DNA of 63,402 bases, the filler included, from Octopus bimaculoides (taxonomy: Eukaryota), in assembly GCF_001194135.2 (NCBI RefSeq). It is 6 parts of 6 records of this genome, joined end to end, with 100 filler letters (N's around TTAATTAATTAA, not from the genome) between each part and the next. Parts side by side here need not be neighbours in the genome. Positions count along the whole stretch, not along the records: positions 18,607 to 50,295 come from NC_068993.1; 5 more parts are not named here. One strand, given 5' to 3'. Made by a program: the position numbers and the translations under genes. How positions within the stretch are numbered: position 1 is the stretch's first letter; each line of letters starts with the position of its first letter. Shown here piece after piece: positions 18,607 through 33,423 of the stretch. Below the pieces are notes generated by a model. The model did not search any database, was not told the origin of the DNA, and was given only the letters and a program-made list of their open reading frames with translations.

Positions 18607-19222
18607 ACTGTGATGGTTAATTTAGTGGTGGTTGTGGTTGTGCTAGTGGTGTTAACAATGATGCTAGTGGCGATGGTGTAGGTGAGAGAAATAATGGTTC
18701 TGGTATTGGCGCTGACGGTCATGGTGGTTGTGGTGGTGGTGGTGATGGCGGTGGTGGTATCATGGTCGTATTAATGATGTCATTGATAAGTTATTGTTGT
18801 TCTTGTTAGGCATGTTGCTGCTGGATGTGGCGGTTTTATATTCATTTAGAGTTGTTCTTGTAGCTGCTACTGTGGTTCATAATTTTAGAGTCGTTTTTAT
18901 TTCTGTTATTGTCGTTGTTGTTGTGCCACTAATCTTGCAAAGCGTTTGTAATCGAATGCTAATGACATCAAATCTGAAATTGATTTATATATTTATTTCA
19001 TCAGCAACAAGCACAACAACGTCTTTGTCATCATCACTCTCCTCTTCCTCTTAGTCGTCGTCACGTCGTCGTCGTCATCGTCATCGTCGTCGTCGTCGTC
19101 ATCATCATCACCATCATCAACATCATCAACACCATGATTACCGCTTACGCCACCACCGCCAAATTACACAAACATCACCATCATCATCATCATCATCTTC
19201 ATCACCTTCATCATCTTCGTCG

Positions 19223-19275
<53 letters not shown>

Positions 19276-19530
19276 TTCATCACCACCACCATCATCACAT
19301 TTATCATCAACTTCCTCCTGGTCGTCATCGTTGTTACCCTTATCCACATCCTCGCCCCCCCCCGTCTGAACTGCTACACGCCCTCTGCCAACAATAACAC
19401 TTCTACTACAACCATCTGGAATACCTCCAGCTTCACCACCACAAACATTGTTACCCACACCCGCCTCCGCCTCCACCTTCACCTACTCCTTTATCATCAC
19501 TATACTACTTCATCATCATCATCATCACCG

Positions 19531-19569
<39 letters not shown>

Positions 19570-19868
19570 CCATCATCGACAACAACCTTCCCCCTCCCTC
19601 CTTCTTAACGTCTACCGCATTCTCGTCCTCCTCCTCCTTTCTCTTTATCTCCATCTTCCCATCTTTCTCCTATCCACCATATCTGATCTTTCTTACACAA
19701 TTTATTTTCCCGCCCACACCCCTCCTCTCTCTTATTCCTCCTGTGTTCTCTACCCTCACCCTCATTTGTCACATCTCTTTCTTTTCCATTCTGTACTGTT
19801 TTTTTTTTCTTCTTCACTCATTTACTTGTGCTCTTAAGTCGATACACGATGTTGTTGTTAGTGATGAC

Positions 19869-19900
<32 letters not shown>

Positions 19901-19908
19901 CGACGATG
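18607..19908. repeat. Compound trinucleotide low-complexity block (GTG/GTT, CAT/CGT, CCT, GAC)
   Basis: Directly visible; it generates the spurious poly-His/Asp/Met ORFs. Confidence 0.95.
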
Positions 19909-24446: not shown

Positions 24447-25100
24447 CTGTCCTTGAGTGATTTAGAAATAATAACGTTTCTATTTATTAGATCAGTAACT
24501 GTGTGTCCCTTTGAAAATTATATATTTTCGAACGGGAATTCAGCGGCGCCGTCTAGCTGAGCAGCTACTTTGTGTTGATAAAGTGCAATAACTAAGAAAT
24601 CGGTCGACAGGTGTTGCTTTGTGCTGGATGGAGGTGCTGAGCTTTCCACTTCGAAAATACAAGGAAACAGGTATTGTGTCGTATAGCTATCTGGAAACGA
24701 CGTTCCCTGGGGCTAAAGAACAGTAACATTCGACTCATCCCGGACAGCAACATTATTTTATCAAATTGTCTTTACTTTAAAGTACTGGTACTGAATATCT
24801 TTCTTTGAGAGATTTCAAAAATAATACTGTTTCTAAATATTAGATCATTGTATGTGTATCCTGTTGAAAATTTTATACTTTCGAACGGGAATTCAAAAGT
24901 ACCTTCTAGCCGAGCAGCTACTTTATGCTGATAAAGGGCAAGAACCCAAGAATCGGTCTACAAATGTTGCTTTGTGCTGGATGGGAGTGCTAAGCTCTCC
25001 TGTTTGAAAATATAAGGACACAGATATTTTGTCGTATAGCGAGGTGGAAACGCCGTTTCCTGTGATTAAACAACAGCAACATTCGTCCCATCAATGACTG
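24447..25100 (+). repeat. Tandem pair of 353-nt units, each with a decayed hammerhead; homologous to the 32.2 kb element
   Basis: TTCGAACGGGAATTCA, GAGCAGCTACTTT, ATCGGTC, TGTTGCTTTGTGCTGGATGG and GTCGTATAGC each occur twice, about 353 nt apart. Cores are TTGATAA (24575) and CTGATAA (24928). Confidence 0.85.
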
Positions 25101-25122
25101 CCGCATTATGCTGGCAAATAGT

Positions 25123-31815: not shown

Positions 31816-32179
31816 TTTCTCTCACTAAGGATTTACAGGAAGTTCAAGGACGGTACAGGACAATACAATACAGTACAATATGGGTTTATATAAACGTGTT
31901 AAAATATGAAAATAACAGAAACACATAATTTAAACGAGATATAATTTCCTAAAATTGGGTAAAATTCCCAACGCTGCACTTGGGAAACCCGCAACACTGT
32001 CGTAATTCTGACCACTGGTGCAACTGCCACTTCTCTATTGTCCCCACTCAAGTTACAGGCGAGGTCGCATTGCAGGCCCTCCCACTCGGATCATTCTTAC
32101 TGCCCACTTCCACCGTTCAACAAATTTACTGGAAGGTAGCACTTGACTCTTCTCTTACACTGTCCTCACTGGTTTTCAG

Positions 32180-32559
32180 AGAGAGACTTAGAAATATTAA
32201 TATCTCTATTTCTGAAAACCGGGTGATGTATTCCACTGAAATTAGATAAATAATCCTTCGTACAGACGGTCAGTAGCGACGCCTGATGGGTTCGGCTGCT
32301 CTACATTGACAAGGGGCAATACCCCGAAACTAGTCTGTAGATGCCAAACCAGCAAGGGGAAGCTGCTGACCTCCCCTGTTCGAAGGTTATAAAGGACACA
32401 GGTTCGTGTGTCACATAGATAGCTATAGGCGGTGGCCTCTTGGAGTTAATCAACGGCAGCATTCGTCCTATTTTTTGGACTGCCATGTTGGCTTGGCGAT
32501 AACTATTAATATCCAGTACCGCTGCCGTAGTCTCCTTTAGAGAGACTTAGAAATATTAA

Positions 32560-32560
<1 letters not shown>
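32180..32560 (+). mobile_element. Retrozyme-like 359-nt unit with 22-nt terminal redundancy, carrying a hammerhead ribozyme
   Basis: AGAGAGACTTAGAAATATTAAT occurs at 32180-32201 and 32539-32560. An internal hammerhead is present, and the unit is colinear with the 24.4-25.1 kb units. No ORF. Confidence 0.75.
32289..32350 (+). ncRNA. Type I hammerhead ribozyme, apparently intact, U3-A8 core variant
   Basis: GGUUCGGC-UGC-UCUACA-UUGACAA-GGGG(CAAUA)CCCC-GAA-ACUAGU-C-UGUAGA-U-GCCAAACC. Stem Ia is 6/6 bp and stem Ib 7/8 bp with an asymmetric internal loop; stem II is 4/4 GC; stem III is palindromic; triplet GUC. Predicted cleavage is after 32335. Confidence 0.9.
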
Positions 32561-32600
<40 letters not shown>

Positions 32601-32717
32601 NNNNNNNNNNNNNNNNNNNNNNNNNNNNNNNNNNNNNNNNNNNNNNNNNNNNNNNNNNNNNNNNNNNNNNNNNNNNNNNNNNNNNNNNNNNNNNNNNTAT
32701 ATATATATACATATGCA

Positions 32718-33423
32718 ACTTTCCATGTGCACATCGCTCAGATGGCAACACTATGCAGGCGGGTGGTAGGTTGGATCCTTAGATCCTTCAGGACCAGGAA
32801 CAGAGACAGAATGCTTCTGCTTTGGTGAACCTTTGTCCTCAGTAGTCTAGACTAATGCTCCCGACTGTGGTCACCGCAGAGCGTAAAACTAATAGCAGAA
32901 CTACAGGCGATCCAAAGCCACTACACAGAGAAGATAGACTCAGTAAAACACGGGCTACTGGATGAAGTTGAAGGCACTTGGACTCTACTCCTTGGAGAGG
33001 ATACGTGAAAGATATGCAGTGTTATACATATGGAAAATAATGGAGGGTCTAGTTCCAAATTTCGGAATCCTCGATCTGGACGGCACTGCACAGAACCAAA
33101 GGTCTCATCGTCTCCATCGAGGATACGAACCTAATATGTAATAGCTTGGGCTTCAAGGGACCACAATCTTTGAATGCCCTACCACAGAACATGAGGAATC
33201 TGCAAGGTGTAGACATGGATGTCTTGAAAAAACATGTAGACAGTTTTTTTATCTGCAATACAGGATGAACCCACATCGCGGCAGAAGGCACAGAGAAGAG
33301 CAGCAAATTTCAACTCGGGACTTCACCAAAAGCAATACTGGAAAAATCCCCGGATGCAGTAAAGGCGGTGCACCCTCATGGCTTCAGCCTCTGGCTGAAA
33401 CTCATAAAAGAATAAAAGAATAC
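32718..33423 (+). mobile_element. CR1-type LINE, 5'-truncated, with 3' tail
   Basis: WILRSFRTRNRDRMLLLW*TFVLSSLD*CSRLWSPQSVKLIAELQAIQ...LKALGLYSLERIRERYAVLYIWKIMEGLVPN...SLGFKGPQSLNALPQNMRNL; the tail ends (AAAGAATA)2. Confidence 0.9.

What the first reader, a model, noticed from the sequence alone, without database searches (positions are those of the whole stretch)
32289..32350. Apparently intact type I hammerhead ribozyme with a U3-A8 core
Seen: every hammerhead element is present. Stem Ia UCUACA/UGUAGA, core UUGACAA, stem II GGGG/CCCC with loop CAAUA, GAA, stem III ACUAGU, GUC triplet, and distal stem I GGUUCGGC/GCCAAACC with a 3x1 internal loop. Established: C3-G8 is a tertiary Watson-Crick pair, and the U3-A8 double change preserves it. 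Loop II/stem I bulge contacts accelerate natural type I hammerheads, and short palindromic stem IIIs are typical of dimer-acting animal hammerheads. Inference: this copy is catalytically competent, and searches requiring CUGANGA would miss it.
Basis: partly seen in the sequence, partly recalled or inferred. Interest (0 to 1): 0.9.

Follow-up and report, generated by a model that had tools for sequence, protein, structure and literature searches.

The report
Hammerhead ribozyme inside a retrozyme-like repeat
The motif is a real, complete animal-type (type I) hammerhead self-cleaving RNA that sits in a ~359-base non-coding mobile repeat of an invertebrate genome; its unusual U3-A8 core pair is a rare natural variant already described, so this is a new example of a known kind.

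Summary
Positions 32289-32350 (+) hold every element of an extended type I hammerhead, with predicted cleavage after C32335. My descriptor finds it once in the piece and never in 3000 simulated pieces.

It is not an isolated motif. It lies in a ~359-nt non-coding unit (32180-32538) whose first 24 nt recur at 32539, followed by (CT)19 and an assembly gap. Two diverged tandem units of the same family lie at ~24447-25115, with decayed hammerheads. All three carry A8, and two carry U3. As a circle the unit folds unusually stably (z = -4.7). Unit size, GC and lack of coding capacity fit metazoan non-LTR retrozymes, which are PLE-related hammerhead repeats.

A lake-metagenome 580-nt tandem repeat carries the same helix II, loop 2 and helix III with the canonical C3-G8.

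Helix III is one base pair plus a palindromic CUAG loop, so cleavage probably needs a dimer. No partner is visible at this locus.

Natural U3-A8 covariation is already published (Perreault 2011; Cervera & de la Peña 2014). Rfam misses this copy, but it also scores the canonical cousin far below threshold.

Catalysis is untested. Verdict: genuine hammerhead, new member of a known kind, modest interest.

The parts
32289..32350 (+). Complete extended type I hammerhead ribozyme motif (copy F)
   Evidence: Sequence read. Unique descriptor hit, with 0 hits in 3000 simulations. 82 bits with family model R1. Helices supported by covariation.
32306..32312 (+). Catalytic core strand UUGACAA, with U3 = 32306 and A8 = 32311 in place of C3/G8
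   Evidence: The same 28-nt catalytic centre occurs in L001 with G8, and with C3 just 5' of the aligned block.
32313..32325 (+). Helix II GGGG/CCCC with loop 2 CAAUA (G10.1-C11.1 kept)
   Evidence: Identical in the lake-metagenome tandem repeat L001.
32326..32335 (+). G12 A13 A14, palindromic helix III ACUAGU, and cleavage-site C17 (predicted scission between 32335 and 32336)
   Evidence: The ACUAGU self-duplex is -4.8 kcal/mol. The double-hammerhead conformation is -45.0 kcal/mol against -42.4 for two monomers.
32180..32538 (+). One full ~359-nt non-coding repeat unit carrying the hammerhead (retrozyme-like unit). The start is approximate, to within about 5 nt.
   Evidence: The direct repeat of the unit start is spaced 359 nt. 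Colinear homology to units A and B. Folded as a circle: -121.1 kcal/mol, z = -4.7, GC 45.7%. No real ORF.
32539..32562 (+). Terminal redundancy: the first ~24 nt of the unit repeated. This is either the start of a second unit or a PLE-type 'tail'. It runs into (CT)19 (32563-32600) and the assembly gap 32601-32697.
   Evidence: Gap coordinates.
24447..24799 (+). Diverged family unit A. Its hammerhead remnant at 24560-24620 has core UUGAUAA (U3-A8), a broken helix II and helix III AUCGGU.
   Evidence: 60.9 bits.
24800..25115 (+). Diverged family unit B, in tandem with A (353-nt spacing), ending at (TA)19. Its hammerhead remnant at 24913-24973 has core CUGAUAA (C3.A8 mismatch) and a disrupted G12 region.
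   Evidence: 66.1 bits.

Best explanation
The motif is a genuine type I hammerhead ribozyme of the canonical animal architecture: a 6-bp helix I with a 3x1 internal loop and a distal stem, a 4-bp helix II, and a minimal palindromic helix III. It belongs to a ~359-nt non-coding, highly self-paired repeat unit of the metazoan non-LTR retrozyme kind. These are non-autonomous elements related to Penelope-like elements.

Inferred mechanism, by analogy with characterised retrozymes:
1. Multimeric transcripts of tandem units fold so that the palindromic ACUAGU segments of two neighbouring hammerheads pair into one extended helix III (a 'double hammerhead').
2. [quoted passage not shown]
3. A host RtcB-type ligase circularises this RNA.
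4. A retroelement reverse transcriptase copies the circle back into short tandem or partial-tandem insertions, often at microsatellites.

The U3-A8 core is an isosteric replacement of the C3-G8 tertiary Watson-Crick pair. It was probably already present in the family's master copies. It is expected to permit cleavage, perhaps at a reduced rate.

The copy in this window is a 1.07-unit insertion. Unless a second unit is hidden in the gap, it has no cis partner and is probably a well-preserved product of that life cycle rather than an active source.

Shown here: motif integrity, non-chance status, family membership, helix covariation, a stable fold, and a canonical-core cousin. Inferred: cleavage, dimer dependence, circularisation and mobilisation.
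For: - The motif is complete and unique, with 0 hits in 3000 simulations.
- It lies in a 359-nt unit whose start recurs at 32539.
- Two further family units in tandem lie 7.5 kb upstream. Their homology to F is colinear and significant: local-alignment z = 6.2 and 12.0, above all 500 shuffles, with matching offsets within the unit.
- The hammerhead fold is kept across F, A, B and L001. 86.8% of cells pair against 71.9% in shuffles (0/500 reach it). Eight pairs have changes on both sides. The slid controls are much lower.
- A8 is present in all three family copies and U3 in F and A, although F is only 55-57% identical to A and B.
- L001, a 580-nt tandem repeat whose units are 99.8% identical, carries UCCUAA CUGACGA GGGG CAAUA CCCC GAA ACUAGU A UUAGGA. 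Helix II, loop 2 and helix III are identical to F, and within the shared catalytic centre the differences fall at positions 3 and 8.
- The unit folded as a circle gives -121.1 kcal/mol, z = -4.7, 0/200 shuffles as stable. GC is 45.7% against about 33% around it.
- The double-hammerhead conformation is energetically accessible.
- No coding capacity and no tRNA-like head.
- Literature, retrozymes: animal type I hammerheads sit in 150-450-bp low-GC tandem repeats that are expressed as self-paired circRNAs. Amphibian ones, with a 1-bp helix III plus a palindromic tetraloop, cleave well only as dimers (PMC7229834).
- Literature, U3-A8: it covaries in natural hammerheads, and such variants are active in vitro (PMC3088659, citing Przybilski & Hammann 2007). 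About 1,300 U3-A8 motifs were found in Schistosoma PLEs (PMC4209133).
- Literature, PLE link: PLE-type insertions have partial tandems, 30-40-bp tails and a microsatellite bias (PMC8557442). Retrozymes derive from PLE pLTRs (bioRxiv 10.64898/2026.07.22.740005).
Against: - No cleavage, expression or circRNA data exist for this sequence.
- Only 1.07 units are visible at the locus, so the dimer partner is missing or hidden in the gap at 32601-32697.
- Only three family copies could be examined, and two have decayed hammerheads. Family-wide fixation of U3-A8 therefore rests on a three-copy parsimony argument. Copy B has C3.
- No PLE or other reverse-transcriptase gene of the right kind lies in the 31.7-kb piece.
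- Rfam's hammerhead models do not recognise the motif.
- A competing fold that pairs G5-A6-C7 with G16.2-U16.1-C17 is 1.5 kcal/mol more stable than the hammerhead-compatible fold in a monomer.
- PLE-type minimal hammerheads showed only low activity in vitro (PMC4209133).
- The host species, and hence the genome-wide copy number, could not be determined.
Confidence: 0.75

Rival explanations
1. Inactive relic. The motif descends from a hammerhead, but U3-A8, the 5-nt loop 2 and the near-absent helix III make this copy, and perhaps its whole subfamily, catalytically dead or negligible. It would be a neutrally preserved young insertion.
For: Sister copies A and B are clearly decayed. There is no cis partner at the locus. 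PLE-type minimal hammerheads cleave poorly in vitro (PMC4209133). A competing inactive fold is slightly more stable.
Against: Every other constrained position and every helix is intact, although the unit is about 45% diverged from A and B. The only departures from the canonical core are exactly the two partners of one Watson-Crick pair, and they changed to a complementary pair. By my estimate this is roughly a 1e-4 outcome for two random hits among about 43 constrained positions. 3-8 pair exchanges are reported active in vitro, and U3-A8 occurs in natural hammerheads (PMC3088659). The same loop 2 and helix III occur in a 99.8%-homogeneous, hence recently amplified, tandem repeat.
Confidence: 0.17
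2. It is part of the pseudo-LTR of an autonomous Penelope-like element, truncated or hidden by assembly gaps, rather than a free-standing non-autonomous retrozyme.
For: PLE pLTRs carry type I hammerheads with small palindromic helix III (PMC4209133). The ~24-nt terminal redundancy and the adjacent microsatellites resemble PLE insertion signatures (PMC8557442). U3-A8 was first seen in bulk in PLE hammerheads (PMC4209133).
Against: No RT or GIY-YIG reading frame lies anywhere in the piece. Units A and B follow each other head to tail with 353-nt spacing and no ORF between them. The motif has the canonical extended architecture (4-bp helix II, no bulge between A9 and 10.1, tertiary-loop layout), not the PLE minimal variant described in PMC4209133. 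The downstream coding remnant at 32740-33400 gave no Pfam domain and no PLE signature. Its C-terminal motifs look to me like a LINE tail, which is my reading and not a tool result.
Confidence: 0.06
3. Chance resemblance or assembly/consensus error: either the motif is not hammerhead-derived, or U3/A8 are miscalled bases.
For: This is a draft assembly with many gaps. Rfam gives no hit.
Against: 0 hits in 3000 simulations. Homologous copies with compensatory helix changes. A8 is seen independently in three copies and U3 in two. A near-identical catalytic centre occurs in an unrelated tandem repeat.
Confidence: 0.02

Closest known systems
Metazoan non-LTR retrozymes (Cervera & de la Peña 2020, PMC7229834)
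   Same: A type I hammerhead in a non-coding unit of a few hundred bp (359 and 353 nt here; 150-450 bp reported). GC below 50%. Head-to-tail units. A strongly self-paired predicted circle. No LTR, PBS or PPT. Dispersed short arrays.
   Different: Only 1.07-unit and 1.9-unit arrays are seen here, against dimers up to large multimers reported. The core is U3-A8 instead of C3-G8. Expression and circRNA are untested. Genome-wide copy number is unknown.
Amphibian satellite 2 / axolotl HHR_Amex1 hammerheads (dimer-acting)
   Same: Helix III is reduced to a single A15.1-U16.1 pair closing a palindromic tetraloop (CUAG here). The helix I / helix II layout is the canonical extended one. Efficient cleavage is expected only as a double hammerhead.
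   Different: Invertebrate-like host. Different unit sequence. U3-A8 core. Loop 2 is 5 nt (CAAUA).
Schistosoma Sm-alpha type I hammerhead (the structural model of the extended hammerhead)
   Same: From my own knowledge of that ribozyme: a 6-bp proximal helix I, a 3-nt x 1-nt internal loop (UAC/U there, UGC/U here), a 4-bp helix II and an A-rich loop 2 (CAAAUA there, CAAUA here). It too sits in a ~330-nt SINE-like repeat.
   Different: The core there is C3-G8. Loop 2 here is one nucleotide shorter. Helix III here is shorter.
U3-A8 natural hammerhead variants (Perreault et al. 2011, PMC3088659; Cercyon PLE min-HHRs of Schistosoma, Cervera & de la Peña 2014, PMC4209133)
   Same: The same double change at the 3-8 tertiary pair. 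It is missed by CUGANGA descriptors.
   Different: The PLE examples are minimal hammerheads with a long helix II and no tertiary-loop layout. This copy is a full 'canonical' extended type I motif in a retrozyme-like unit.
L001, a 580-nt tandem repeat from a Trout Bog Lake hypolimnion metagenome contig (found here)
   Same: Identical G-GGGG-CAAUA-CCCC-GAA-ACUAGU catalytic centre. A 6-bp helix I, an internal loop and a distal stem. Tandem non-coding units.
   Different: Canonical C3-G8. A17 instead of C17. 580-nt unit. The rest of the unit is unrelated. Source organism unknown.

Membership tests
Hammerhead ribozyme, type I (Rfam RF00163, clan CL00010) | Invariant core nucleotides U4 G5 A6 A9, G12 A13 A14, A15.1-U16.1, and H17 (not G) at the cleavage site | tested here: met
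   All are present at 32307-32309, 32312, 32326-32328, 32329/32334 and C32335.
Hammerhead ribozyme, type I (Rfam RF00163, clan CL00010) | Watson-Crick pair between positions 3 and 8 (C-G in nearly all members; U-A documented in natural members) | tested here: met
   U32306 and A32311 can pair. The letters differ from the consensus, but the pair is kept. Natural U3-A8 covariation is reported in PMC3088659 and PMC4209133.
Hammerhead ribozyme, type I (Rfam RF00163, clan CL00010) | Three helices around the core, with helix I open (type I), G10.1-C11.1 closing helix II, and helices supported by covariation | tested here: met
   Helix I is 6 bp plus a 7/8 distal stem. Helix II is 4 bp. Across four sequences 86.8% of cells pair and 8 pairs have compensatory changes, with 0/500 shuffles reaching this. 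Helix III forms only as 1 bp plus a tetraloop, or intermolecularly.
Hammerhead ribozyme, type I (Rfam RF00163, clan CL00010) | Score at or above the Rfam gathering threshold (34 bits) | tested here: not met
   No hit at gathering, nor at E<=10 in 1.1-kb and 91-nt searches. This is a limit of the model rather than a biological criterion. The canonical-core cousin L001 also scores only 13 bits.
Hammerhead ribozyme, type I (Rfam RF00163, clan CL00010) | Mg2+-dependent site-specific self-cleavage 3' of position 17 | not testable with these tools
   This needs in vitro transcription and cleavage assays.
Metazoan non-LTR retrozyme | Type I hammerhead within head-to-tail repeats of about 150-450 bp | tested here: met
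   The unit is 359 nt, with its start repeated at 32539. Units A and B are in tandem at 353-nt spacing. The arrays are short (1.07 and 1.9 units), and the hammerheads of A and B are decayed.
Metazoan non-LTR retrozyme | Low GC (<50%), non-coding, no LTR/PBS/PPT | tested here: met
   GC is 45.7%. The longest frame is 81 aa, with no homologue and no Pfam hit. No flanking long repeats.
Metazoan non-LTR retrozyme | Unit RNA is highly self-paired | tested here: met
   Circular fold of -121.1 kcal/mol against -93.5 +/- 5.8 for 200 dinucleotide shuffles, z = -4.7.
Metazoan non-LTR retrozyme | Abundant expression as linear and circular unit-length RNA; many genomic copies | not testable with these tools
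   No transcriptome or whole genome of the host was reachable. Only three copies are seen in 31.7 kb.
Penelope-like element pLTR hammerhead (min-HHR) | Located in direct repeats flanking an RT + GIY-YIG ORF | tested here: not met
   No such ORF in six-frame segments of the piece. Of the 10 plausible coding segments scanned against Pfam, only a Helitron Pif1 2B domain was found. Assembly gaps leave some room for doubt.
Penelope-like element pLTR hammerhead (min-HHR) | Minimal architecture: long helix II with an extra nucleotide between A9 and 10.1, and no tertiary-loop layout | tested here: not met
   Helix II is 4 bp and directly follows A9. The helix I internal loop and distal stem are present. 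Criteria taken from PMC4209133.
Penelope-like element pLTR hammerhead (min-HHR) | PLE-type insertion signature: partial tandem, short tail, microsatellite target | tested here: inconclusive
   A ~24-nt terminal redundancy followed by (CT)19. Unit B ends at (TA)19. This is suggestive only. Criteria taken from PMC8557442.

The most novel reading that the evidence does not exclude
A whole retrozyme family whose master copies propagate with a U3-A8 core in a fully extended, tertiary-stabilised type I hammerhead. U3-A8 would then be ancestral to two subfamilies that are now about 45% diverged. Copy B (C3.A8) would be a snapshot of the mismatched state on the path between C3-G8 and U3-A8. That would make this family a natural evolutionary experiment on the C3-G8 tertiary pair in the canonical animal hammerhead, as opposed to the minimal PLE variants where U3-A8 was seen before.
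Probability: 0.35. Interest if true: 0.45.

Novelty: new member of a known kind. Interest (0 to 1): 0.3.

Why it matters
If the cleavage assays work, this copy would be a natural example of the isosteric U3-A8 replacement in a canonical extended animal hammerhead. It would also add one more retrozyme-like family in an invertebrate genome.

Practically, it shows that standard annotation misses this class. Rfam covariance models and CUGANGA descriptors fail on it. Rfam also scores a canonical-core cousin far below threshold, so hammerhead and retrozyme censuses of animal genomes probably undercount short-helix-III motifs.

It does not open a new question. The pair, its natural covariation, dimer-acting animal hammerheads and retrozymes are all established.

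Tried and rejected
- Rfam at gathering over the whole piece, and at E<=10 over 1.1 kb and 91 nt, gave no hammerhead hit. The weak miRNA, lncRNA and snoRNA hits (E of 1.5-6) were dismissed as chance.
- A protein search with the 61-aa minus-strand ORF across the unit, meant to fish out other copies through spurious gene calls, found nothing.
- I tried to identify the host and fetch same-species DNA. The Helitron fragment gave at best 77-81% identity (Octopus bimaculoides partial proteins; also Limulus, crabs, spiders), with no same-species hit. The contig of P0003 has no hammerhead. An exact look-up of the window's ORF is not on record. The LINE-tail query hit only a 563-nt contig labelled E. 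coli at 55% identity. The host stays unidentified, described only as an AT-rich, microsatellite-rich invertebrate-like genome.
- The pattern scans of IMG/VR and of the GTDB genomes found nothing real. The one IMG/VR hit with a looser pattern is a chance match in an AT-rich giant-virus bin with no helix II.
- The idea of a Pol III B-box or tRNA-derived SINE head (GGTTCGGCTGC) was rejected. It has two mismatches, the match count is at or below chance, and no tRNA-like gene is present.
- The idea that the 22-24-nt direct repeat is a target-site duplication was rejected. The same segment is internal to units A and B at another locus.
- The idea that the downstream LINE tail belongs to the same element was rejected. 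Units A and B are not followed by it.
- Przybilski & Hammann 2007 (PMC1986816) is not held. It is cited only through PMC3088659.
- No held paper contains the string GGGGCAAUACCCC.

Full report
**1. What is in the sequence**

Positions 32289-32350 (+) read GGUUCGGC-UGC-UCUACA-UUGACAA-GGGG-CAAUA-CCCC-GAA-ACUAGU-C-UGUAGA-U-GCCAAACC. In hammerhead numbering this gives:
- a 6-bp proximal helix I (32300-32305 with 32336-32341);
- a 3x1 internal loop (UGC / U);
- a distal stem I of 8 positions with one C.A mismatch;
- the core strand U3 U4 G5 A6 C7 A8 A9;
- a 4-bp helix II closed by G10.1-C11.1, with loop CAAUA;
- G12 A13 A14;
- A15.1...U16.1 within the palindrome ACUAGU;
- C17 at 32335.

RNAfold forms stems I and II in the minimum-free-energy structure.

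**2. Is it more than chance?**

I wrote a descriptor with these requirements:
- 6-nt helix I arms with at least 5 pairs;
- YUGANRA with a Watson-Crick 3-8 pair;
- a 4-bp helix II with G10.1-C11.1;
- a loop of 4-8 nt;
- GAA;
- A...U with 15.2/16.2 paired;
- H17.

It hits the 31.7-kb piece exactly once, at this place. It never hits in 3000 second-order Markov simulations, both strands. No other Rfam family is present in the piece.

**3. Context: a repeat family, not a lone motif**

The segment AGAGAGACTTAGAAATATTAAT at 32180 recurs at 32539, a spacing of 359 nt. It is followed by (CT)19 and an assembly gap at 32601-32697.

About 7.5 kb upstream, at ~24447-25115 on the same strand, lie two head-to-tail units, A and B, with 353-nt spacing. 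A and B are 77% identical to each other and 55-57% identical to the unit with the hammerhead, F. The F-A/B homology is significant. Local scores have z = 6.2 and 12.0 and exceed all 500 shuffles. The homology is also colinear at the same offsets within the unit.

The repeated 22-24 nt is part of the element and not a target-site duplication, because A and B contain it too.

A family covariance model run with filters off finds only F (82 bits), B (66) and A (61). The next hit scores 11.7 bits.

The unit has no real reading frame and no protein homologue, and no tRNA-like part. Its GC is 45.7% in a region of about 33%. Folded as a 359-nt circle it reaches -121.1 kcal/mol, against -93.5 +/- 5.8 for dinucleotide shuffles (z = -4.7, 0/200).

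**4. The hammerheads of the relatives**

- A reads ...UUUGUG UUGAUAA AGUGCAAUAACUAA GAA AUCGGU C GACAGG... It has U3-A8, helix II is broken, and helix III AUCGGU is still self-complementary through G.U pairs.
- B reads ...UUUAUG CUGAUAA AGGGCAAGAACCCA AGAAUCGGU C UACAAA... It has a C3.A8 mismatch, A.A at 10.1-11.1, and a disturbed G12 region.

Both are decayed and F is intact. Across F, A, B and the metagenome cousin, 86.8% of cells pair, against 71.9% after shuffling (0/500). Eight of the 20 pairs show changes on both sides. Sliding the partners drops pairing to 34-57%. With four sequences this is supportive, not conclusive.

A8 is shared by all three family copies. U3 is shared by F and A. 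Parsimony therefore places U3-A8 before the split of two subfamilies that are now about 45% diverged. This is an inference from three copies.

**5. A canonical cousin**

A scan of JGI metagenomes for YTGANRAGGGGCAATACCCCGAAA returned one contig, L001, from the Trout Bog Lake hypolimnion (1112 nt). It is a 580-nt tandem repeat whose units are 99.8% identical.

Each unit carries UCCUAA-CUGACGA-GGGG-CAAUA-CCCC-GAA-ACUAGU-A-UUAGGA, with an internal loop and a 7-bp distal stem. Helix II, loop 2 and helix III are letter-for-letter those of F. Within the catalytic centre the differences are positions 3 and 8. Helix I is different but compensated, and position 17 is A. The rest of the unit is unrelated.

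So the F motif is the U3-A8 version of a hammerhead module that occurs with the canonical core in a recently amplified tandem repeat of another organism.

**6. Helix III and dimer dependence**

ACUAGU cannot fold back on itself as 3 bp. A 2-bp stem would leave a forbidden 2-nt loop. A monomer therefore has at most A15.1-U16.1 closing a CUAG tetraloop.

[quoted passage not shown] It also matches the general description of animal type I motifs in PMC4209133.

Two copies can form a 6-bp intermolecular helix III (-4.8 kcal/mol). The nested double-hammerhead conformation of two domains evaluates to -45.0 kcal/mol, against -42.4 for two separate monomers.

At this locus no second hammerhead is visible. 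If the array continued, it would fall at about 32648, inside the gap.

**7. The U3-A8 core**

It is established that C3 and G8 form a Watson-Crick pair in the active structure. The catalytic contribution of residue 8 comes from its 2'-OH (own knowledge, Martick & Scott 2006; see also PMC11300833).

[quoted passage not shown] Cervera & de la Peña found about 1,300 U3-A8 minimal hammerheads in Schistosoma PLEs (PMC4209133).

The feature is therefore rare but known. My estimate, an inference, is that two random hits among about 43 constrained positions would land on exactly this pair, and in complementary form, about once in 10^4. This argues for compensation or inheritance rather than decay.

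**8. Detection by standard tools**

Rfam gives nothing for F, even in a 91-nt search at E<=10. As a control, the canonical L001 motif gets Hammerhead_1 at 13 bits (E = 1.4; gathering threshold 34) in a 91-nt search, and nothing in a 1.1-kb search.

But the short helix III already puts this whole class below threshold, and U3-A8 removes the residual signal.

**9. What it is and how it probably works**

Several features match metazoan non-LTR retrozymes (PMC7229834):
- unit size;
- head-to-tail units;
- GC below 50%;
- no coding capacity;
- a strong self-paired fold;
- the type I hammerhead.

Recent work derives these from Penelope-like element pLTRs (bioRxiv 10.64898/2026.07.22.740005). The ~24-nt terminal redundancy and the microsatellites at the ends of both arrays, (CT)19 and (TA)19, resemble the PLE insertion signatures described in PMC8557442. 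This is suggestive only. No PLE ORF is in the piece.

The inferred life cycle has four steps:
1. Multimeric transcription.
2. Double-hammerhead self-cleavage after C17.
3. RtcB-type circularisation.
4. Reverse transcription by an autonomous element into short tandem insertions.

The F copy is most simply a well-preserved product of that cycle.

**10. Limits**

- The host was not identified. The best named relatives of a Helitron fragment are Octopus bimaculoides partial proteins at 77-81% identity.
- No further family copies could be fetched.
- Catalysis, expression and copy number are untested.

**11. Verdict**

- It is a genuine hammerhead in a retrozyme-like repeat, with a known rare core covariation.
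- It is a new member of a known kind.
- Interest is about 0.3.

Noticed in passing
L001 (JGI contig TBL_comb47_HYPODRAFT_10135176), whole 1112 nt, minus strand: A 580-nt tandem repeat (units 99.8% identical, GC 41.5%) from a freshwater-lake metagenome. It has a canonical type I hammerhead with the same helix II, loop 2 and helix III as the window's motif. It is probably a retrozyme of an unidentified lake animal. Rfam scores it at only 13 bits.
   Followed up: partly
window 32740-33400 (+): The 3' coding remnant of a non-LTR (LINE-like) retrotransposon with frameshifts (…LKALGLYSLERIRERYAVLYIWKIMEGLVPN… then …GPQSLNALPQNMRNL…). It ends in an (ACAT)/(AC)/(AT) microsatellite. No Pfam domain was found. 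Its only database relative (55% identity) is a 563-nt contig labelled Escherichia coli, probably contamination of that assembly.
   Followed up: partly
window 48063-48506 (-): A Helitron-type Pif1 helicase fragment (Pfam Pif1_2B_dom, E = 3e-15). The best named relatives are partial Octopus bimaculoides proteins (77-81%), then Limulus, crabs and spiders.
   Followed up: partly
window 39079-39516 (+): A reading frame that looks like a LINE reverse-transcriptase fragment (…GVIQGDSVSS… / …FGLETCAKI…YKYLGV), cut by the assembly gap at 39519-39716. Pfam gave no hit, so the call rests on motif resemblance only.
   Followed up: no
window 32171-32220 (+): An imperfect ~16-bp hairpin (GGUUUUCAGAGAGAGA … UCUCUAUUUCUGAAAACC) spans the 5' boundary of the repeat unit. 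It gives weak, non-significant Rfam miRNA hits on both strands (mir-5615, E of 2.6-3.5).
   Followed up: no
window 18722-19906: A GC-richer stretch (43%) made of many trinucleotide arrays (TGG, GTC, CAT, TCA, GAC). These give long poly-Asp and poly-His frames. It may be a low-complexity exon or just microsatellite.
   Followed up: no
window 18607-50295 overall: Extremely microsatellite-rich DNA: 58 TRF rows, including a 265-nt (AC)n at 44754-45018. There are eight internal assembly gaps, most of them flanked by (TA)n or (CT)n. This explains why repeat arrays such as the hammerhead units are truncated in the assembly.
   Followed up: no
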